DNA of 56,474 nucleotides, counting the filler, from Dugesia japonica (lineage: Eukaryota), in assembly GCA_001938525.1 (NCBI GenBank). It is 5 parts of 5 records of this genome, joined end to end, with 100 filler letters (N's around TTAATTAATTAA, not from the genome) between each part and the next. Parts side by side here need not be neighbours in the genome. Positions count along the whole stretch, not along the records: positions 31,602 to 47,538 come from MQRL01604241.1; 4 more parts are not named here. The stretch is one strand, 5' to 3'. Below, in pieces: positions 30,911 through 47,538 of this stretch; position 1 is the stretch's first letter; every line of letters begins with the position of its first letter. Both the position numbers and the translations under genes were made by a program. The notes beneath the pieces were generated by a model that was given only the letters and a program-made list of their open reading frames with translations, searched no databases and was not told the origin of the DNA.

Positions 30911-31874
30911 CTTAAAATGATGCTTGTTCCAACGTGCAACGGTTCCGATGAAATCCGTGATCATCTCACCGGCACGAATGAATTTGAAAATTAACAATAT
31001 TTATAGATAGNAAATAATTTTTATTTTCTTGTTTTTAATATATAAATCTAAATTTTAACATGAACAAATAAAAATAATTTAATATCATTTTCATTTTTAA
31101 TTTAACTTTTTATTCTCTTTTATAATATTTGACTCTTATTTGAAAATTCCAATCCTTTCGTTATAAATAATAATATTTATGTAATAATAATAATTTTAAT
31201 AATATTTATGATACAATAATAATAATTTCAGATAGTTTCTTTCTATCTTGTGCATATGGATTTATACGGGAATAAATATAAATATTTTAATATTCTTACA
31301 CAATCTTACATTAACTTTTTATAATCTTTCATTACATATAATTCTATTTTCTTAATTCTAATTTCTTCTTCGTAATTAATAATATTTAGCTAAAATAATA
31401 ATAATACTATATTCTAATTATTCAAACACTTTTATTAAAATAATAGGCTTTTCTTTTTTACATTATAATAATGTTTATACATATTTTTAACTACAAATAT
31501 ANNNNNNNNNNNNNNNNNNNNNNNNNNNNNNNNNNNNNNNNNNNNTTAATTAATTAANNNNNNNNNNNNNNNNNNNNNNNNNNNNNNNNNNNNNNNNNNN
31601 NAATTTTTTTTATCTAAACTGTAATTGAAAATTGATATTATTAAAATCTAAAGATGTTATACAGGTTCTACAGTAAGGTTCTATATTCTTTTCAAAGGTA
31701 TATTTGTATGTATTATCTGTTTCTTGTCATTATTAATGCGTTTCATTCGCATTATTTCTTCGTAGTTTAGCACATTTTGTAAACTTATTACTTGTTTAAC
31801 AATTTTATTTTAAAATTTTCTTCAAATCTGAAGAGTAAGAAAAGTGTATATTAAAACNTTTTGAATTCTACCTT

Positions 31875-32100
31875 TCATTAAAAATAAAATAATAGTTTTG
31901 ATCAAATTAAATTGTTGTTTTCTATTCAAATTTTCAACTATTTCCTGGGATATTCCTGAAGAAGACAAATAGTCGAAAATTTGAATATCTATAAAACAAA
32001 AATTTAATTTGATCGAAGCTTTTACTTTATTTTAATAAAATCTCAAATGCAATCAATAGTTAAGTCCAACAATTGTACTCAAAATAATTAAAATTATAGA
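31875..32100. repeat. Hammerhead-bearing repeat (31949-32100, +) with an abutting inverted partial copy (31875-31948)
   Basis: The reverse complement of 31875-31945 (aaatagttgaaaatttgaatagaaaacaacaatttaatttgatcaaaact) aligns with 31967-32020. Confidence 0.8.
31949..31989 (+). ncRNA. Minimal type I hammerhead ribozyme motif (Penelope-type)
   Basis: GATATTC (stem I) - CTGAAGA - A - GAC AAATA GTC (stem II) - GAA - AATT (palindrome in place of stem III) - T (cleavage site) - GAATATC (perfect 7-bp complement of stem I). Confidence 0.75.
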
Positions 32101-33479
32101 ATTTGAATTGTTTACTTTTTATTTTATTTCCTACTGCGTATTGTTATGACAAAAACAGATCAGTTTATGGTTGGATATGAAGTAAACAAAAAATATTTAG
32201 TGCAAACAAATACTCCTTTAGAATAATTAGAGAAAAAATTGATAAAAGGTTTTCTAATAGTAAAAACTAATTAATAAATAATAAAACAACAATTCATTAA
32301 AACAAATTTTTATTTTGAAAATAATATTTAAACATTGCATTTTTTTACAATGCTAAAAGTACTAAACATGAATCAATTTGATACATAAAATTTCAGATAA
32401 TTTATAAAAATTGTCGAAGATAAAATTTATTAACTTACAGGAGTTATAATTATTTGATAGCAAATTGATAACAAACATAATCACAAGTAGAAAATTTACG
32501 TTATTCAAACAAAATAATAAATTAACATTGATTGAGCTATTCTCAATGAGCACAAGCAGCAGCATCTGTACAATAGCGCATTATCGACAAAGAAATATTT
32601 TCAAATAATCATTTAATAAATTAATTTACTTATTTGCTACAAACAGTTAGACGATTATTCCAGAGAGTAATTAATTACACACTCTCTAATGATTAATTAA
32701 ATAGANGTTTGCGACTGCTTAGATACTACTTTTTGTGTTTNGTTTGAATAATCNCAAATTGTAACATAATTATTTCGAAATGTTTATGATGTTCCAACCA
32801 ATTTAATTCTCATAAGTTTGTTAATAAATTATAAAATTTGTCCATTTAAACTATTTATTTTCAGATTAAGTATGTTTTTAATTTCTTTTCTTTCTCTTAT
32901 CTTTGTTGATTCACAAATAATGAATTCCTCCGAATCCAAGAAAAAATACTTCATTTATTTCTTAAAAATAAATTTTTCATATTTATTTTTATTTCTGGAT
33001 TGTAACTTATTTTCCGTTTCCTTAGAGATTTAATTTTACTTGATTTCTGTTTACTAAATTGAACAAATATTGTTTACCGTTCATTAAGTTGCTTTCCTAT
33101 CTTTTTTATTTGCATTCTGATTTGTTATTCTTCTCAAATTAATTTACTTGCTTTAATTATTAACAATAATTAACTTAATCATTTTTTATTCTTCCTCTCA
33201 GTCTTATAGTTCTGTTTAAATTTATTTGTTAACATTTGTTTGCTTTTTTTCATTAGAATAGTCAGTTTTATCTCAGATTGCTGAATTATTTATTCCCGAT
33301 TTAGCGAATCAGTCTTATTGATGTAATATAATATTTGGCTTGTTATTAATTTCAAGGAATTTTCTTTATTTACTTTCAGGTGATATAACTTCATTTTTAT
33401 GTTAAATACTACATAAACCTAGTAGACCAGATCGCTTAAAATCCCAAGATTATACGATACTATAATTATTAGTTCTAAA

Positions 33480-34580
33480 AATGAATAATACAAAGTTTTC
33501 AGTAAACTTCAATATTTATTAAAAATGTGACACAAAATTTTAATCAAAAGTGATCGCCATTGTTTTGGATAACATTAAACAATAAAATTCCATTTCTAAA
33601 AACGTTTGGCTGTTTGGAGGAGATAAAGTCGTCCAACTCTTTTCATATGACATCCATTAATTGAAAGTGTGTATGTCACAAGGAGACCTGTATTGATTAG
33701 AAAAAATGATAATCAGTTTGACTATGTCAGGTGAATACGCTAGGTGCACCAAGATTTCCCAGTCAAGTTTCGTTATGGTGTCCTTTGTCTTTAAAGCAAT
33801 ATATAACTTAGAGTTTTCATGCAACAATTTTACAAGACGCCTTTCATATTATCACAAATGTACAGCATTAAGGTTTTTCTAAAACGATAGTGCTTTGCGA
33901 TCGATGTTAAAGGTTTGTCGGTATTTATCCATGACATTTTACGTTTAAAAATATNATATTGTATTTATTTCTCATCTACTGTCACAATTGTATGCAATAA
34001 TGACTTTCAACGCTGTCTATTGAGAAGAGAAATAAAAGTTCCAATTTGTTTATCTTTGCTGGATTGACGGAGTTCACGATGGACATTTTTTCTTTTATTT
34101 TGGATGATACCCATCTTATGTAAATGGTTAGAAACAGTTTGTTAAGTTACTCTCAATTGTTTGTAAGCTTTGTTTGTGTCAAATTATGAGAAATTAGTAG
34201 TTCCAGATATCCATTGCTGCATGTTCTACTAGTTACAGTACGTTGTATGTCTGTGACACTGAAATCATCTCTTTTAAATAGCCTGAACCAAAATGCTCAC
34301 CCATCATACGACACTTCATATTTGCCGGTAACGGAACAAAATGATTCACATGTTCTTTCTGTATTTTCCTGCTGAAATTCATACATGATACAGTGTTGAA
34401 TACGCGCCTTATCTGTCGCAACGTAGAACTGAAATATTTTGATGTTTTTGTTTGATTCATTTGCCAATTAAATTTCATTTTAATATTTTATTTAAAAGTT
34501 GGTTGTAAATTGGAATATTAAAAAGATTGCATTATGTATATAACATAGAGAAAACATTTAGATTATTTATGGACCTACTA
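33480..34580 (-). mobile_element. Decayed mariner (DD34D) transposon
   Basis: Minus strand: HTIVTVDEK (~33970-33995) and LDWEILVHLAYSPDIV..DYHFF (~33700-33768), matching IVTGDEKW and HPPYSPDLAPSDYHLF. Confidence 0.85.
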
Positions 34581-35409: not shown

Positions 35410-38400
35410 TAACTTTTATAATGACCATTTGCATATTAGTATTTCTTTCGCTCCAAAAGCGTTTATCATCCAGGGGAGACAATGCGCTTATTATACTCTC
35501 CATTGTATAAACCTGATAGTTTATTGATTGAAAGAGAGTCTACATAACATTGTTTTGTTCTTCATCTCCATCTCCATCTTTGTTGTATGCATTTAAATAA
35601 TTTCAATTATTGATGTCTGTTTGTTTTAAACTGATCTCTTTTGCTTTCATTGCCATCATAGCATCTGCTTTCTCNNNNNNNNNNNNNNNNNNNNNNNNNN
35701 NNNNNNNNNNNNTATAACCTTCACCTTCTCTTTCATATTTAATCAATCCAATTCTGTTGGCCATATTGTTAGAATAAAGTGGATAATCTTTAAGTTAATT
35801 GCTTGTATCCAAGAGACTATCCAATTTCATTTGAGACAAAAGTTGGCTGTTATCTACTACAGTAAATGATAAGAAAAAGCTATCCGTTTTTCCAGAAGTA
35901 ATATCAATTTTGCAATGAAATTGCTGACGATATTTTTCCAACTCTTCATATTGGACCTTATACATTCACAATTTACTCAAATCTATAACCATCTGAGTTC
36001 TTTTGCAATATCCATTGTTTTCTTAAATAATACTTTACTAGTGTAAGTCACAAATTCTTCTCTTTATTACATAGCTAGAAAACCATTTTCAAATTCTCTT
36101 CTCTCGTGTTGTATAGCGCATTATTTGATAGTTTGTAGAAATCCTTTTTAAATTTAGATTTTGATTCAGCTCTTCTCTCAGAATTCGAATTAATATAATT
36201 GGCAAATATTTTTCTTTGTTTGAACTAAAATTATCTATGTACTGCAGTTACAAGAGCTCCGAGCTTTAGATATAATTTCAATAATCGCCAATATACGATA
36301 TAATGTAGTTTTGGTTCATATGTCATTAGCAACTTCTTAACTTTCGATCTAATTAGAAATTTGTGTTCTGGGGACAAAAGTAATTGATCTTACTTATCAT
36401 GATGTTTGATAGATATTTCAAGATCAATTTCACGCAGGCATCCAATCTCATTATTGTTATTGGTGAACATCTTCTGTAGTATTTTTTAAATTTGATCTTT
36501 TTATATAAAATCAAAATTTCTATATGGTAAAGGCTGCCCAATCATATTGATGTCAATAACAAACATTGAAATATTCTCATCTTCCTGGACATAGTGCGTG
36601 TCCACAAAGATCATTCCAACACAAATTTCTAATTCAAATAGACCATGTATTTCAGCATCTTGACATAATTTTATTGGTTTTCTCACGACTTGAGAGCATT
36701 TGTTTAGCTTACTTCTTCAAGTGACACAAATTTTCGCGGCTCCAATCTATGTTCTTCAAGTGCTTTTTTGCNAAATGTTTAAAAATTATCAGCAAACAAG
36801 TATATATCTAACTTTATATAGTACATAATGTATTACATCAAGTTATTGCTTCTCCAATACATCCACGCAAACATAAGGATTTCATATTCTCTACTTTTTA
36901 TTTGTGGTCATTGTGATAATTTGGTTTGATTTATGAGCACTTCATGCGAAGTTGCAAATTTTTACGGAAATATACCCTGGTTTTGTTGTCCATGAAGAAA
37001 TTCATTAATGCTGATAAACTGGAACTGAAAAACCGGAGTGAATCTATAAATGGTTCCGTGACATGAATTTCCACATTTGCAAACATTGCCAAAAACCTTT
37101 CAGTTGTTTGCTTGATTGGATTAAGATTTCAATGTAGATATTGGTTAAGCGCATATTTAATTATGTGTGGTGAATCATAATCTTTAAAGTTATGAAACAC
37201 AACCGGCATTTCCATCCTCATCTTGCGTGATAAATTGCACTGATTACATGGCGCTTCGAAATATTCTTTAGTATAGTGATCATTATCACAAACCAACTTG
37301 TTTTATTGCATCCATACAAATTAAAATGTGTGCTTTTTATAAAGACTTCTTGGTATGATGTTGTCAAGTTCAATTTCATACACATAGCTTTCTTATCACA
37401 AGAGTCTAGTAGATTCTTTGACACCTTATAAATTATCTTTAAAATCTCAACCATACCGTTTATACCCGATAATGAATAGTACATGCATTTAATTGTCGTA
37501 TTCAATAAGCAAATCAATAAAAGACCTACAGCTATAGGCACATGTTTTACTAGACTACTATCTTTTTCTGATAAAAGAACAGCTTCAATATCTGCATTTA
37601 TTATAAAAGCCGGTGTTGAGGTTTTTACCTAATCTTTGCATTTCAATTATCCTTTTTCAGGCATTTTATATAACGTTGTTTTTTTGTATTTGATTTACAT
37701 AAAGCTACATGATGATTGAATGTAGATTTAGTATTGAAACCATGTAAGCATTTAATACTCCATTTTCTTCTAATTTGAATGTTTTGTATTCGATCATATA
37801 AATTCAAAAATCAATTTAAATTTATCACTGAAGTATAATGAAACTCTTGATCAATTTCCAACACTAATAAAAATACAGTCTATTTGGGTTTTTATCTCTA
37901 AAAATGATATCACATATGGATTTTTCTATAAAATTTCATTTTCTTTTTTTACGGTTTCTTTATATTTAAACACTGTGATCAATAAATTATTTTGACTTTC
38001 AAAGTTTGGAATATTGATGACTTTCATTGACATTTTCAGTTTATCATATACTAATTCATTTAAAACACTGTTATACTTCTGCGGCCTCTATCGATGATCC
38101 TTAACTATATCATACTTCAGCATTGCTATGTATAAAGTATGCTATATATTGTTGTCAGTATTGTGAACATTTACTATTGCATTGGATCTATGTAATGCTG
38201 TAGGACTATGAATAAATAATAATTCATATAAATAAATTACTAGGGCATATTTCGATAAATAAATCGTAGCTCTAATATTCTTCTAATTTTACATCCACTG
38301 CTGAGCTCTGAATACACTGAAATTTCTGTATTTGTTTTTTCTGTTATTTTATCGATAAAATCATCTGAATTTTCCATTGCCTTATATGACCATTGTTCTT

Positions 38401-38700
38401 TTTTAATTTCTTCTTCCTCACCATCAGTCTTTTCGAATTCTGCATGGAATTCAATGTTTGAATTTCTTGAACTCTTCTTCAAACTGATTTCTCTCTGGAA
38501 TAATCGTCTAACTGTTTGTAGCAANTAAGTAAATTAATTTATTAAATGCTTATTTGAAAATATTGCTTTGTCAATAATGCGCTTTTGTACAGATGCACTG
38601 CTTATAACAATGTTAATGGTATATTTTAGGTGTATCAGTGACTTTTCATTTTCCTTTCTCATTGAGTCTTTAATAATATCTGATGAAATTATAAATTAAT
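35410..38700 (-). pseudogene. Polinton/Maverick (adintovirus-like) protein-primed DNA polymerase B pseudogene
   Basis: Collinear motifs: ELSSGCKIRRILEL, AIVNVHNTDNN, PAFIINADIEAV, VCDNDHYTKEYFEAPCNQCNL (endonuclease VII-like), MPVVFHNFKDYDSPHIIK, GIFP, MIGQPLPYRNF, TDSFF, MKAK, ALSPLDDKRF. Many stops and frameshifts. Confidence 0.87.
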
Positions 38701-39052: not shown

Positions 39053-40810
39053 CAATTAAAATATGTATTTTATGTAAAATGTACTATAACTTGCGACATG
39101 TGACCCGTGGGTCGTCAGTTGATTATCACTGGTTTTAAATTAATGAATATTTTATTACTTTTATGATTTGTAAAATTAGCATAATTATTGTGATTACTAC
39201 CCATCCACAAAATTTAGAAGTAATAATTTCAAAATATTCTAGAATAGATGATAAAATATTATATTTAATGATGAACGTATGAGACTGGTTAATCTTTTGA
39301 GAATAAATAAACTGAATTCGAATTTTCTAAAATTAAAATATTAAACCGAAATAATTAATAGTTTAATTCATAGTATTTATGTTGTTTCTATGAATTCAGA
39401 CTTAGTATGACGTCAGTAAAAGAAAATTGATTAGATTTACTAAAAGAAACTTGTACAAAACAAAATGTACATACTTTCAGTTTTAAGTGACAAATAATAA
39501 TTCACTTAACAATATCAAATTTTTGCTATGTAAAAAATTGGAAAAACACAAGAATGTTTTCGACTAAACCTGCTTGAGGCTTTTTACTAAATTTGATACT
39601 GAAATTTTTTTTTTATTAATACAATTTCTGTTTTAATTTTCTTAAATGTTGTAATAAAATAATGTTAATACATTAAATATCGATTAATTTAATGTAACGA
39701 TTGGCTATAAATTAGAATTAAGTTTTAATGATATCGACTACATATCATCGATTTCATTATTGATCGATAAATGCTAGTCTATATTATTAATATTTGTTGA
39801 TTGTATAATTCATAATTAAATTCGAAAATCAATAAATAATTATAAGTAAATTAAATATAACAGATTGATCTTAGGCTATTTTTATTTTTACGAGAGAAAT
39901 TGCTGGTGTTCACCGATGGACATTATATGGTTTTCACAAAATATTCGTTGAAGGTAAAATTTTGATAATAATTGATTGCTTTCCAGTACTCCTGATATTA
40001 CTGTGTATTAAGTTCCCATAATACTAAATAATTATTAGAAGAAAATTATATATTTCACATTGATCTTAGGATGTTAATTCTTTTACAATAGCACCAATGA
40101 TCACCGATAGACACACAGTATATTTCATTTCGAGACTGTTTCAGTTATGGGTTGAAAGTGTAAAGAGCAATGAGTCAAATATATTTATTTTATTATTTTC
40201 CATTAATCTTAGAAATCATTTAATTAAATATCTAAATTGAGTCTTAATTTTGCAATTTCGATGAAGAATATTAATTATTGTGTTTGACCAAAAATGCAAA
40301 TTAAATCATTGATTTTAATAATGAAAATCAATAATAGTATTTGTAAGAACTAGTTCTTGCCTTAGAAAAGTTTTTAATTAATTAAAGAAAAAATTTTTTT
40401 AAAGCTTTTATTATTTTATAAAATATTTAAATTTATAAATTGTTGTAATTTATTTTAGTTTGTAGAATTTTTTCATTTAAAATTTCTAGAAAATCATAAT
40501 ACAGTTGTTAGATGTGTCTAAGACATTCATAGTTGAATTCAAAAAGAGAATTTGATTGCATTTATTTAAAAAATTTATTAAACAATAAATAAAACTTTAT
40601 TTCCAAATATAAAATATTGCAAAAAAAATTAATTGTATTAATTTATTTAAATATTTAAAAACATTCTTATAAATAAACTTTAAATTATTTTTAATAAAAT
40701 AAACAAAATGCATTTCCATAAAAATTTCATATTTTTTACATTAAATTAAAAAACACTTTTATAATTTTTTTAATAATTTAATTCAAATTGCTTTTAAATT
40801 AATTTAAAAT

Positions 40811-40985
40811 TCAATTTCTGATGAAGACAAAGTCATAAGTTTGAAATACTATCAAAAACTAAAACCAAAAAAATACAAAAAAAATAAATATTTCGATGGA
40901 AACTTTTAATTTAATGAAATCTCAAATACGATCAATGATTAAGTCCAACAATTATTCTCGTAATAATTCTTATAATTGTAAAATT
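40811..40985 (+). repeat. Hammerhead-bearing repeat copy (CTGATGA variant)
   Basis: caattt-CTGATGA-a-GAC-aaa-GTC-ataa-gttt-gaaat ... atctcaaatacgatcaatgattaagtccaacaattattctcgtaataatt. Confidence 0.8.
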
Positions 40986-41257
40986 TACATTAGAATAATA
41001 TTTTGTAAAATATTTCAATAGAAATACCATAAATATTTATAAATATTTAAAAATATATTTAATTATTTATTTTAAATAATTTTAATATATTTGCAGCTAA
41101 AATCATTGTTCGTTAAAAATAAATAAGGAACAAATTAAATAATAAACATTTAGAATAATTAATAATTTTATTTTTTATTATTTAGATAGTCCTTAATACT
41201 TATTTCATTTTTTTTCTTAAATTACTTTTCTTTCAAATTAATTAAGTGTCCATAAAC

Positions 41258-41300
41258 GTCAATTCCTGACGAAGACAAAATCAAACATTTGAAATACTTA
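41258..41300 (+). repeat. 5' fragment of the hammerhead-bearing repeat (CTGACGA variant)
   Basis: gtcaattc-CTGACGA-a-GAC-aaa-aTC-aaac-attt-gaaatac. Confidence 0.7.
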
Positions 41301-41329: not shown

Positions 41330-41610
41330 ACTAATGTTTTCATTTCTATTCGGAAATTGGAAAATGTTTGAATCGTTTAAGAAGGAACCATTAGAATAAA
41401 CCTTCATCAAAATNTTTTGTTGTNTTTTAATATCTGCTGTGATTTTCAATGCTCTTCTTTAATGTTCATTAGGCTTTTTAAGAATACTATTTACTGAACT
41501 AAGTGAAATTTGAAACTCCTTTGCAATATATCTTTGCTAACAATTACCATTTTCTATTGCAAATTGAATGACTTTTTTTCTGGTTTTACAAGCTATTGTT
41601 CTTTTTATTG
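41330..41610 (-). mobile_element. Second Tigger/pogo HTH remnant
   Basis: ENGNC*QRYIAKEFQISLSSVNSILKK...FDEGLF*WFLLKRFKHFPIS parallels the peptide at 16918-17277. Confidence 0.6.
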
Positions 41611-41799
41611 TTCATTATTAAAGGTGTAGAAAATATTAAAATTTAAACAAAAACAATATTTTACGGCGTAAAATATTTGTTGAAAATATTACAAATAAAT
41701 ATTTTTTAAAATTTGAGTGAATTTAAAACCAAAATTAATAGAATTTTTATTGATTATTTTGAAAAATTCAATTTAACTTAAAATTCTTATTTAGGTAAG

Positions 41800-42185
41800 T
41801 TTTTACAATTAAAATCATTGCAAAAATAATTGTTGGACTTAACCATTGAAATTTTAATTAAAATAAAAGCTTCGATGAAAATTTCTTTTTTATATTTCTA
41901 GTATTTTGACTTTTTGATTTATTCAATATTTAATATCACAATAGAAAATTTTTTTTTTGAATTAATTAATTTTATTGAATTTTAATTAGTTAATTTTAGT
42001 TTTTTAATTATTATAAATTACATTGATTTAAGATTTATCTTCTTTAATTGGTAATTATTCCCATGAAAAATATAATAATTAAATATTATAATCTATTGTA
42101 AAAATAAATATTGAATAAATCAAAATATTTTAAATAAATAAAAAAATAAATTTTGATCGTAGTTTTTATTTTAATAAAATTTCGG
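41800..42185. repeat. Inverted pair of degenerate copies of the hammerhead-bearing repeat (41800-41930 -, 42105-42185 +)
   Basis: aataattgttggacttaaccattga...aaataaaagcttcgatgaaaattt...gatttattcaatattt vs aaatattgaataaatc...aaattttgatcgtagtttttatttt. Confidence 0.65.
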
Positions 42186-44650: not shown

Positions 44651-45084
44651 TTTGTTATTGATTAATTTATTTTCAATTAAAAACGTTTGCTGAAATTCGA
44701 TAAATTTTAGTAAGACTTAATAAAAAAAATTTTAATACATAATTCTTCTTTAGTAATGATATTTTTAATAATATAATTTTCTTTGTAAAAGTTGCAGATA
44801 ATGTTAATTATTGTTAAATAGTTGATAAAATTAAATAATGGTTAAAATGATTGATTAATAATTATTTTTCTTAGTATCGATAATGATTAATAATTGTAGT
44901 AATGTTTAATGATGATATTAATTATTATTAATGATGATTATAAATCAATAACTAGAGGGAATATTTATAGTGGAATAATAAAAGTAAAGTCATTTTGAAA
45001 GTAATTAGTAATGANTAATCATCTGTAATAACTATTGATGTTGTTAGAGGCAACTTTAATAATATTAATAATAATATTAGTAAT

Positions 45085-45245
45085 CATTTAAAATAAAAGT
45101 TTCGATTAAAGTTTTGTTTTTCTTTTGGTATTTGATAACAAAATATACATCGAAGCTTTTATTTTAAACAAATTTTGAAAAACGATCAATGATTATGTCT
45201 AACAATTATTCTAGCAATAAATGCAATTGTAAAACAATAATAATA
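45085..45245. repeat. Head-to-head truncated copies of the hammerhead-bearing repeat
   Basis: tttaaaataaaagtttcgat (45087-45106) is inverted against atcgaagcttttattttaaa (45149-45168), followed by the family 3' body and an AAT-rich tail. Confidence 0.7.
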
Positions 45246-46384: not shown

Positions 46385-47538
46385 TTAAAATATCCTATTT
46401 CCCACTCGTCTAATTCGTAAATGATTAAGTAGTGAAAATAAAATCCTTTTCACAGTTTCACGAAACGTTCCCAGAAAACAACAATAGAGCATGAAATTAA
46501 TCGAGAAATTGATAACTTGCATAATATTCGTAATAATTTCCGCATCACGATATATTTCATCATTTGTTGAAGTTGAATAATTATTTATTTTGTTTTTATT
46601 AATCGGAATCGAATAAATAATATGTTTGATGATTTCTGATGGTGCTACTAAAATCAGAAATGTCACAATGATTGATATTAATGTTATGGTTACTCTCATG
46701 TTATTTGAGGAAAAATGCTGAGGAGTTCTTGATACAGACAAAATCTGAGAATCTCCTCTTTGACTTCGAGTTAAAATTCTGTACAAAGCTGAATTTGTTG
46801 AATTGCTATATGAAGATGAATTCTGAGCTAGTTTTACACGATGCGCTTTGGAAACTGTAATCGTTAAACGAATATTGAAAATAAATAGTAAAACCAAAGG
46901 TATAATATTGCCCAATAATGTCCATGTAATACGAAAGAAATGCTCCATTTCAAATGAAAACGATTTGAATTCGAATTTATAATAATAAAAAAACGAATCG
47001 TAGAATTTGTTTGAACAATTCTTTACGTGTAACTGCATGTTGATTCGGAACACATAAGGAATATTGAATAGAATAGAAATTAGAAATGTAAGAAAAATAC
47101 ATATTCTCGTTTTGGTCAATGTAATAAAATGACAAGCTTTTAGTGGATAACAAACCGCAACAAATCTCTCAGTTGCCAACAATACTGTTAACCAAGTACT
47201 TGAAAAAATAAATATATTGATAAATACATAGGAATATTTCGCGTAATAATAATAAAAATCCACTTGAATAAAAATCTCATGATGTGGCGATAAACCAGTT
47301 GGGAAAACAAAACAACACACCATTAAATCACTTATTGCCAGGGCTTTTAAGCATTGATTTGCACTCTGGACTCGTCTACCGAGAGTGTTTCGTAATCGTT
47401 TCTCTGATAATACAGCAAGATTTAAAATATTTCCAATTATTCCACATAAAGTGATAATCGGAATGAGAATATGATAGCAAATAAATGATAGAGTTGTTGT
47501 TTCAAGAAATATTGTGCACTTTTGACTGTGATTTAATG
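46385..47538 (-). CDS. Class A (rhodopsin-like) neuropeptide GPCR, FMRFamide/myosuppressin/sex-peptide-receptor-like clade. Intronless in view; the N-terminus is lost in the gap
   Basis: The frame stays open upstream of 47323: LNHSQKC...IPIITLCGIIGNILNLAVL (TM1 GN)...LKALAISDL (TM2)...STWLTVLLATERFVAVCYPLKA (TM3)...LFNIPY...IIPLVLLFIFN...FLILVAPS...NFSINFMLYC (TM7), then stop. Confidence 0.95.

What the first reader, a model, noticed from the sequence alone, without database searches (positions are those of the whole stretch)
31949..31989. Intact minimal hammerhead ribozyme at the head of an abundant short repeat
Seen: GAUAUUC-CUGAAGA-A-GAC(AAAUA)GUC-GAA-AAUU-U-GAAUAUC. It has a perfect 7-bp stem I, both conserved core boxes (CUGANGA, GAAA), a 3-bp stem II, and a palindromic tetranucleotide in place of stem III followed by the UH site (cleavage predicted after 31982). 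Known: this is the architecture of the minimal type I hammerheads of Penelope-like elements and animal retrozymes, thought to cleave as dimers through the palindrome. Inference: this is a non-coding, ribozyme-bearing mobile RNA family that an ORF-based annotation would miss.
Basis: partly seen in the sequence, partly recalled or inferred. Interest (0 to 1): 0.85.

Follow-up and report, generated by a model that had tools for sequence, protein, structure and literature searches.

The report
Minimal hammerhead in Penelope-type repeat
The hammerhead ribozyme motif is really there and is unlikely to be chance, but it is one surviving copy in an old family of truncated retrotransposon ends of a kind described in animals in 2014, so it is a correct but ordinary find.

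Summary
The 41-nt motif at 31949-31989 (+) is exactly as described. It has a 7-bp stem I, CUGAAGA, one unpaired A, a 3-bp helix II closed by G10.1-C11.1, GAAA, a palindromic AU, then U16.1-U17. Predicted cleavage is at 31982/31983. It was the only hit to my minimal-hammerhead descriptor in the 16-kb piece. In 317 Mb of dinucleotide shuffles, one hit had stems as long, and none also had the G-C closure.

The motif lies in a roughly 160-240 nt dispersed repeat with four full copies plus fragments, 71-82% alike. Only copy A is intact. Two others keep the left box exactly, differing only at the free N7 position, but have lost G12 and stem I. One copy and its inverted twin share a dead left box, and one copy lacks the motif.

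Three of the four insertions are a forward copy abutted by an inverted, 5'-truncated partner. The partner lacks a roughly 60-70 nt tail. All four units are flanked by candidate 8-10 bp target duplications. This is the published anatomy of Penelope-like element (PLE) insertions.

No Rfam hammerhead model matched. I found no tandem array, no reverse transcriptase ORF, and no further copies. Catalysis is untested and likely weak. Verdict: a genuine relic PLE-type minimal hammerhead family, a new member of a known kind.

The parts
31949..31989 (+). Minimal type I hammerhead motif, the only intact copy. Stem I is 31949-55 paired with 31983-89. CUGAAGA is 31956-62, followed by the unpaired A at 31963. 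Helix II is 31964-66 paired with 31972-74. GAAA is 31975-78, AU is 31979-80, U16.1 is 31981 and U17 is 31982. Predicted cleavage is at 31982/31983.
31868..32101 (+). Insertion unit A: inverted partial copy plus forward copy, treated as a single insertion.
31870..31943 (-). A': inverted, 5'-truncated twin of forward positions 31967-32043. It keeps G12 and the 3' box but lacks the left box and the tail.
   Evidence: One search gives arms 31881-31924/31990-32033 (86% complementary) and 31923-31943/31967-31987 (95%).
31944..32101 (+). Forward copy A. The hammerhead sits at its 5' head, followed by the arm and then the tail.
32044..32101 (+). Tail: the best-conserved part of the family. It is present only on the forward copy and absent from the inverted partners.
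   Evidence: (D1)
31860..31867 (.). Candidate target-site duplication TTTGAATT, left copy. The right copy is at 32102-32109.
   Evidence: null p about 0.10 alone
32102..32109 (.). Candidate target-site duplication TTTGAATT, right copy.
40744..40983 (+). Unit B. Its decayed hammerhead at 40811-40850 keeps CUGAUGA-A-GAC..GUC, but G12-A13 now read A-U and stem I is weak. Candidate 9-bp duplication TTTACATTA lies at 40735-43 and 40984-92.
   Evidence: (D4)
41253..41298 (+). Fragment E: a hammerhead-only homologue, 83% identical to B over 46 nt. It has CUGACGA-A-GAC, but helix II, G12 and A15.1 are mutated. Its flanks are not recognisably family sequence.
   Evidence: (D4)
41804..42008 (-). Copy C, with its tail. 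The left box has decayed to UUGAAUA-A-AUC and G12 has become A.
42081..42183 (+). Copy F, the inverted partner of C. It shares the same dead left box and lacks most of the tail. Candidate 10-bp duplication GGTAAGTTTT lies at 41794-803 and 42184-93.
45087..45234 (+). Unit D: inverted arm 45087-45118, an 18-nt junction, then forward arm plus tail at 45137-45234. Both copies are truncated downstream of the hammerhead, so there is no motif.

Best explanation
The motif is a genuine minimal (helix-III-less) type I hammerhead of the kind carried near the 3' end (pseudo-LTR) of Penelope-like retroelements.

**What it sits in.** It lies in one old insertion of a short, non-coding repeat family. The members are either heavily 5'-truncated PLE ends or a short non-autonomous derivative copied by PLE machinery.

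**How the insertions formed (inferred).** An RNA template was reverse-transcribed from nicks on both target strands. That produced a forward copy abutted head-to-head by an inverted, 5'-truncated copy. The two copies used different internal start sites, so a tail is present on one side only. Staggered nicks left 8-10 bp target duplications.

**Role of the ribozyme (inferred).** In the source element's transcript it would cut after U17. It would do so only when two motifs pair through the AAUU palindrome to build helix III.

**At this locus.** The motif is a fossil. It has no intact partner, it competes with a much stronger hairpin, and its sister copies have decayed.

**Shown versus inferred.** Shown: the motif, its statistical rarity, the family, the inverted-twin anatomy and the candidate duplications. 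Inferred: PLE parentage and dimeric cleavage.
For: **The motif**
- It is exact, and unique in the piece.
- In 317 Mb of shuffles, one hit had stems as long and none also had G10.1-C11.1.
- It has three hallmarks of PLE min-HHRs that the authors' own descriptor did not require. [quoted passage not shown]

**Conservation among copies**
- The 13 fixed bases of CTGANGAAGACAAA are identical in copies A, B and E. N7, the one core position free to vary, is A, T and C respectively. Elsewhere the copies are 71-82% alike.
- E resembles B only over the hammerhead: 83% there against about 50% elsewhere.
- The inverted twin A' also carries G12-A-A-A. The template RNA therefore had the 3' box, and it was not gained after insertion.

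**Insertion anatomy**
- Three units (A'/A, D'/D, C/F) are a forward copy plus an inverted partner, joined at different points (23, 18 and 124 nt centres). The partners lack the tail.
- Candidate 8, 9, 10 and 10 bp direct repeats flank the composite units. Null p values are 0.10, 0.04, 0.012 and 0.012.
- This matches published PLE anatomy: 5' truncation, an adjacent inverted 5'-truncated copy, and a one-sided tail (PMC8557442).
- It also matches PLE biochemistry: both strands are nicked and extended, with two internal RT start sites (PMC11167929).
Against: - No reverse transcriptase or GIY-YIG ORF lies in the 16-kb piece. PLE parentage therefore rests on anatomy and motif only.
- No Rfam hammerhead model matched, even on 101 nt at E<=10.
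- Helix II is 3 bp, against the 6-8 bp usual for PLE min-HHRs.
- The tail is about 60-70 nt, against the published 30-40.
- Three of four independent lineages have A at G12. The 3' box is less conserved than the 5' box, and no compensatory change supports stem I.
- CpG is not depleted (o/e 0.92), so CpG decay does not excuse the loss of G12.
- The C/F twins share a dead core, so at least one template was already ribozyme-dead.
- In the whole unit, the hairpin fold (-55.1 kcal/mol) beats the best fold that keeps the hammerhead (-44.3).
- I chose the duplication boundaries after viewing the alignments, and D's repeat is low-complexity.
- Only six copies or fragments could be examined.
Confidence: 0.68

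Rival explanations
1. Chance look-alike. An AT-rich palindromic repeat happens to spell a hammerhead-like string in one copy, and no ancestor ever had ribozyme function.
For: - Across a scan of many gigabases, a few motifs of this quality are expected. One search gave about 0.003 per Mb for stem I >=7 and helix II >=3.
- Only one copy is intact, and the local majority lacks G12.
- No Rfam hit was found.
- Helix II is only 3 bp.
Against: - The per-piece expectation is about 5e-5 or less.
- The left box plus helix II is exact in three diverged copies, with variation only at N7.
- Stem I is not a by-product of the palindrome. Its 5' strand lies in the unique centre.
- The host repeat independently has PLE-type anatomy.
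Confidence: 0.12
2. The repeat is a MITE or foldback DNA transposon whose terminal inverted repeats form the hairpin, and the hammerhead string is incidental.
For: - Long inverted arms: 44 nt at 86% and 21 nt at 95% complementary.
- A very stable hairpin: -51 kcal/mol, z -9.
- Candidate 8-10 bp duplications fall within the range of hAT and Mutator elements.
- Mariner and pogo-like relics lie nearby.
Against: - The arms are not at the termini of the unit. A conserved 60-70 nt tail sits outside one arm only.
- The termini of the unit are not inverted repeats of each other.
- The junction between the arms differs in every unit: 23, 18 and 124 nt, with or without the motif. That fits independent truncation, not copies of one DNA element.
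- The candidate duplication length varies.
Confidence: 0.07
3. It is an animal non-LTR retrozyme: a unit of a tandem repeat that is transcribed, self-cleaved and circularised into a small circRNA.
For: - It is a type I hammerhead in a short, AT-rich, non-coding repeat of retrozyme size.
- The rod-like fold of the unit resembles retrozyme and viroid-like RNAs.
- Retrozymes are proposed to be PLE derivatives (bioRxiv 10.64898/2026.07.22.740005).
- B and E carry same-strand motifs 448 nt apart.
Against: - No tandem array with a period above 20 nt is present.
- The sequences following B and E are not homologous.
- The copies are dispersed and lie in both orientations.
- The motif is the minimal variant, not the canonical loop-loop hammerhead of retrozymes (PMC7229834).
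- The rod arises from an inverted DNA duplication that differs between units.
Confidence: 0.08

Closest known systems
Minimal hammerheads (min-HHR) in the pseudo-LTRs of Penelope-like elements (Cervera & de la Pena 2014, PMC4209133)
   Same: - It has type I topology with both catalytic boxes and no helix III.
- It has an unpaired nucleotide between A9 and 10.1, G10.1-C11.1, and a palindromic 15.2-16.2.
- Most copies are solitary and heterogeneous, and some occur as close pairs on opposite strands.
- The host is an invertebrate-type genome.
   Different: - Helix II is 3 bp rather than 6-8 bp, and stem I is 7 bp rather than 4-5.
- No PLE ORF was seen in the piece.
- Only one intact copy was found, and no family covariation could be shown.
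PLE insertion anatomy: 5'-truncated copy with an adjacent inverted 5'-truncated copy and a one-sided tail (PMC8557442; PMC11167929)
   Same: - Three of four units are a forward copy plus an inverted partner, with a variable junction.
- The partner lacks the tail, as expected from two alternative RT start sites.
- Candidate flanking duplications have variable length.
- Templates with dead hammerheads were still inserted, matching in vitro data that the hammerhead is dispensable for insertion.
   Different: - The tail is about 60-70 nt, against the published 30-40 nt.
- The units are only 150-380 nt long, with no coding part.
- PLE parentage is inferred, not shown.
Animal non-LTR retrozymes and classic satellite hammerheads (newt satellite 2, Schistosoma Sm-alpha; PMC7229834)
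   Same: - It is a type I hammerhead in short, AT-rich, non-coding repeats.
- Helix III is weak or palindromic, implying action as a dimer.
   Different: - Retrozymes and satellite hammerheads form head-to-tail arrays and have canonical helices with loop 1-loop 2 contacts.
- Here the copies are dispersed, in either orientation, and the motif is the minimal variant.
Rfam hammerhead families (types I, II, III, HH9, HH10)
   Same: The conserved core boxes are shared.
   Different: No model scored at E<=10, even on a 101-nt slice. These models expect a helix III.

Membership tests
PLE-type minimal hammerhead (min-HHR) | Core boxes C3-U4-G5-A6-N7-G8-A9 and G12-A13-A14-A15.1, then U16.1-H17 (H not G) | tested here: met
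   Boxes at 31956-62 and 31975-78, with U16.1 at 31981 and U17 at 31982. Met in copy A only. Copies B, E and C have 2-4 core changes.
PLE-type minimal hammerhead (min-HHR) | [quoted passage not shown] | tested here: met
   A at 31963. The same A is present in B, E, C and F. The criterion comes from PMC4209133.
PLE-type minimal hammerhead (min-HHR) | G10.1-C11.1 closing helix II | tested here: met
   G31964 pairs with C31974. The pair is also kept in B and E. None of the 57 shuffle hits with stem I >=4 and helix II >=3 combined this closure with stems as long as here.
PLE-type minimal hammerhead (min-HHR) | No helix III, with palindromic 15.2-16.2 so that two motifs can build helix III together | tested here: met
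   A15.1-A-U-U16.1 at 31978-81 is self-complementary. The 4-bp all-A/U duplex is not stable on its own, at +2.2 kcal/mol.
PLE-type minimal hammerhead (min-HHR) | Long helix II (6-8 bp) and short helix I (4-5 bp). This is typical of the family rather than strictly defining. | tested here: not met
   Helix II is 3 bp with a 5-nt loop, and helix I is 7 bp plus one G-U pair.
PLE-type minimal hammerhead (min-HHR) | Genome holds consensus families of the motif with covariation in the stems | tested here: inconclusive
   Only five motif-bearing copies were available. The left box and helix II 5' strand are exact in three of them, with N7 varying, but there are no compensatory stem changes and G12 is lost in three lineages.
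PLE-type minimal hammerhead (min-HHR) | Lies in the pseudo-LTR of an element encoding a telomerase-like RT and a GIY-YIG endonuclease | tested here: inconclusive
   No such ORF lies in the 16-kb piece. Published genomes also hold mostly solitary motifs away from full PLEs.
PLE-type minimal hammerhead (min-HHR) | Self-cleavage at the H17 site as a dimer | not testable with these tools
   This needs in vitro transcription of monomer and tandem-dimer constructs.
Penelope-like element insertion | 5'-truncated copy with an inverted 5'-truncated copy abutting its 5' end, a tail at one end only, and flanking duplications | tested here: met
   Units A'/A, D'/D and C/F. The tail is absent from the partners. 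Candidate duplications are 8-10 bp. The criteria come from PMC8557442 and PMC11167929.
Animal non-LTR retrozyme | Head-to-tail tandem repeats of 150-450 bp, each unit with a type I hammerhead | tested here: not met
   Tandem Repeats Finder found no array with a period above 20 nt in the piece. The copies are dispersed and lie on both strands.
Rfam hammerhead families | Score at or near the family gathering threshold | tested here: not met
   No hammerhead model appeared at E<=10, either on the piece or on a 101-nt slice.
MITE / foldback DNA transposon | Inverted repeats at the very termini of the unit, shared internal sequence, and a fixed duplication length | tested here: not met
   The arms are internal, with a one-sided tail. 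The junctions differ between units, and the candidate duplications are 8, 9, 10 and 10 bp.

The most novel reading that the evidence does not exclude
The family is not just random truncated PLE ends. It is a discrete, very short (about 160-240 nt) non-autonomous element copied in trans by PLE machinery. Twin priming routinely turns it into hairpin units with the hammerhead at the hairpin apex. Its ribozyme-dead variants (the C/F twins) still transposed. That would be natural, in-genome evidence that the hammerhead is dispensable for PLE-type insertion, and a possible bridge between PLE tails and retrozyme or viroid-like rod RNAs.
Probability: 0.15. Interest if true: 0.5.

Novelty: new member of a known kind. 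Interest (0 to 1): 0.3.

Why it matters
It shows that a reader working from sequence alone can pick out a real minimal hammerhead that Rfam models and ORF-based annotation both miss.

The locus also gives a compact natural illustration of PLE-type insertion: twin inverted copies, a one-sided tail, and variable target duplications.

It also hints that templates with dead ribozymes were still mobilised, in line with recent in vitro work.

It does not open a new class of ribozyme or mobile element. Minimal hammerheads in PLE-derived repeats have been reported in thousands of copies across invertebrate and lower-vertebrate genomes since 2014.

Tried and rejected
- **Rfam cmscan.** I searched the whole piece and a 101-nt slice at E<=10. 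No hammerhead family appeared, only spurious miRNA-hairpin and snoRNA-like hits.
- **More family copies.**
  - Two metagenome scans gave nothing for the tail pattern.
  - The arm pattern gave two hits, which were chance matches with no extended similarity.
  - One scan of bacterial and archaeal genomes and one viral scan found nothing.
- **Organism identification.** I tried the GPCR gene at the piece's edge. The best relatives were 35-38% identical on an unnamed ENA assembly. The Atlas neighbours were spread over nematodes, molluscs, arthropods and flatworms. The source is an invertebrate-type animal and nothing finer can be said. The related loci L003 and L004 hold no family copy.
- **CpG decay as the cause of G12 loss.** Rejected, because CpG o/e is 0.92.
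- **Homodimer cofolding of the 41-mer.** It gave a trivial extended duplex. It cannot represent the double-hammerhead, whose helix III crosses the stem I pairs, so it was uninformative.
- **B and E as a decayed tandem dimer (448-nt spacing).** Rejected, because the sequences following the two motifs are not homologous.
- **Supplementary descriptor and alignments of PMC4209133.** These are not held in the library.

Full report

| Element | Coordinates |
|---|---|
| Stem I, 5' strand | 31949-31955 |
| CUGAAGA | 31956-31962 |
| Unpaired A | 31963 |
| Helix II (GAC/GUC) | 31964-31966 / 31972-31974 |
| Loop II (5 nt) | 31967-31971 |
| G12-A13-A14-A15.1 | 31975-31978 |
| Palindromic A-U (15.2/16.2) | 31979-31980 |
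| U16.1 | 31981 |
| U17 | 31982 |
| Stem I, 3' strand | 31983-31989 |

- On its own the 41-mer folds into stem I plus helix II with both boxes single-stranded (-7.6 kcal/mol, z -2.6; 6 of 200 shuffles fold as well).

**2. Is it more than chance?**

I wrote a relaxed min-HHR descriptor. It requires CUGANGA, an optional extra nucleotide, helix II of at least 2 bp, GAAA, a palindromic insert of 0-6 nt, U, a non-G base, and stem I of at least 3 bp (G-U pairs allowed).

- In the 15.9-kb piece (24.6% G+C) it found only this site, on either strand.
- In 20,000 dinucleotide-preserving shuffles of the piece (317 Mb, both strands scanned) there were 240 loose hits.
- Of these, 57 had stem I >=4 and helix II >=3.
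- One had stem I >=7 and helix II >=3, and none also had the G10.1-C11.1 closure.
- The expectation per piece is therefore about 5e-5 or lower.
- A scan covering many gigabases would still meet a few such strings by chance. I therefore did not rest on this number alone and turned to the repeat family.

**3. The repeat family**

A profile search found four full copies:
- A: 31874-32108 (+)
- B: 40760-40990 (+)
- C: 42005-41801 (-)
- D: 45061-45234 (+)

It also found a partial copy F at 42081-42184 (+) and a 46-nt fragment E at 41253-41298 (+). In the well-aligned 3' part the copies are 71-82% identical, so the insertions are old.

| Copy | State of the hammerhead |
|---|---|
| A | Intact |
| B | CUGAUGA-A-GAC..GUC kept; G12-A13 read A-U; stem I pairs over about 3 bp |
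| E | CUGACGA-A-GAC kept; changes in helix II, G12 and A15.1 |
| C and F | Share a dead left box (UUGAAUA-A-AUC) |
| D | Truncated beyond the motif |

*For an ancestral functional ribozyme*
- The 13 fixed bases of CTGANGAAGACAAA are identical in A, B and E. The one position free to vary in hammerheads, N7, is A, T and C respectively.
- E resembles B only across the hammerhead: 83% there against about 50% in the flanks.
- The extra A after A9 is kept in every copy.

*Against*
- The 3' box is much less conserved than the 5' box.
- G12 is A in three of four independent lineages.
- No compensatory change supports stem I.
- CpG is not depleted in this DNA (o/e 0.92), so CpG decay does not explain the loss of G12.

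**4. Anatomy of the insertions**

*Unit A.* Copy A sits in a near-perfect long palindrome. Arms 31881-31924/31990-32033 are 86% complementary and arms 31923-31943/31967-31987 are 95% complementary.
- Only 31944-31966 in the centre is unique. That stretch holds the stem I 5' strand, the CUGAAGA box, the extra A and the helix II 5' strand.
- Unit A is therefore a forward copy starting about 31944, with the hammerhead at its head. It is abutted by an inverted copy, A', that was truncated inside loop II.
- A' also carries G-A-A-A followed by AUUU. The RNA that templated this insertion therefore already had the 3' box.
- Stem I is not a by-product of the palindrome, because its 5' strand lies in the unique centre.

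*Other units.* The same head-to-head design recurs with different junctions:
- D'/D: arms 45087-45118/45137-45168, with an 18-nt centre and no motif.
- C/F: arms 41912-41956/42081-42125, with a 124-nt centre.
- In every case the inverted partner lacks most or all of the roughly 60-70 nt tail (about 32044-32101 in A). The tail is the best-conserved part of the family.

*Candidate target duplications.* Short direct repeats flank the composite units, not the forward copies alone.

| Unit | Repeat | Positions | Null p |
|---|---|---|---|
| A | TTTGAATT | 31860-67 / 32102-09 | 0.10 |
| B | TTTACATTA | 40735-43 / 40984-92 | 0.04 |
| C/F | GGTAAGTTTT | 41794-803 / 42184-93 | 0.012 |
| D | AATAATAATA (low complexity) | 45067-76 / 45236-45 | 0.012 |

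- The null comes from 5,000 random window pairs of the same geometry.
- I set the boundaries after seeing the alignments, so these p values are somewhat optimistic.

**5. What it most likely is**

This anatomy matches what is published for Penelope-like elements:
[quoted passage not shown] Hammerheads lie in the pseudo-LTR near the 3' end (PMC8557442).
- A purified PLE protein nicks and extends both target strands. It starts reverse transcription at two internal sites whose interval corresponds to the tail, and hammerhead mutants still insert (PMC11167929).

The motif itself carries three of the hallmarks that Cervera and de la Pena listed as emerging beyond their descriptor (PMC4209133):
- G10.1-C11.1
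- a palindromic 15.2-16.2

I therefore read the family as PLE-type 3' ends, or a short non-autonomous derivative, and the motif as a genuine min-HHR relic (confidence about 0.68).

The C/F twins share a dead core. This implies that at least one ribozyme-dead template was still copied, which agrees with the in vitro result.

**6. Does it work here?**

Probably not at this locus.
- The nearest other motif is about 8.8 kb away and is mutated, so there is no partner for the dimer.
- The AAUU helix III is all A-U and unstable alone, at +2.2 kcal/mol.
- Helix II is only 3 bp.
- In a transcript of the whole unit, the long hairpin (-55.1 kcal/mol) beats the best fold that retains the hammerhead (-44.3).
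- A transcript starting at the forward copy does adopt the hammerhead stems in its minimum-energy fold.
- Published min-HHRs cleave poorly even as dimers.

**7. Rivals**
- *Pure chance (0.12).* Disfavoured by the shuffles, by the N7 pattern, and by the hallmarks that were not needed to spot the motif.
- *MITE or foldback element (0.07).* Disfavoured because the arms are internal, the tail is one-sided, the junctions differ between units, and the termini are not inverted repeats.
- *Non-LTR retrozyme (0.08).* Fails its defining feature. There is no tandem array, and the B-E pair 448 nt apart does not share its following sequence.

**8. Limits**
- No RT or GIY-YIG ORF lies in the piece.
- No hammerhead model in Rfam matched.
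- No further copies could be fetched from metagenome, prokaryotic or viral collections.
- The source organism could only be narrowed to an invertebrate-type animal.

**9. Verdict**
- It is a new member of a known kind, and of modest interest.

Noticed in passing
window 32562-32676 and 38482-38596: A 115-nt inverted repeat, 93% complementary, with arms 5.8 kb apart. It brackets mariner relics and several unexplained ORFs. It could mark the ends of a large DNA transposon or an inverted duplication.
   Followed up: no
window 33660-33848 (-) and 34300-34467 (-): Relics of a mariner-type transposase. The second ORF matches the Mos1 HTH_48 domain (E 2e-5). By eye, the first reads like the C-terminal catalytic region, but it got no Pfam hit.
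   Followed up: partly
window 46388-47536 (-): An intronless rhodopsin-family GPCR gene of the Srw/FMRFamide-receptor-like kind (7tm_1 E 1e-16, Srw E 4e-11). It is cut off by the piece's edge. The best database relatives are only 35-38% identical.
   Followed up: partly
window 41440-41612 (-): One frame reads like a pogo/Tc1-type helix-turn-helix DNA-binding domain interrupted by a stop, so it is probably a decayed DNA transposon. It lies between repeat copies E and C. It was not tested against Pfam.
   Followed up: no
window 36997-37071 (+): A sub-threshold match to the C/D-box snoRNA model SNORD69: 28.6 bits against a gathering score of 37, E 0.12, over the full model length.
   Followed up: no
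window 36504-37810 (-): A run of same-strand ORF pieces (71, 57, 136 and 55 aa) with no Pfam match. One has a C2H2-like cysteine/histidine spacing. It may be an unannotated or decayed gene inside the 5.8-kb bracketed segment.
   Followed up: partly
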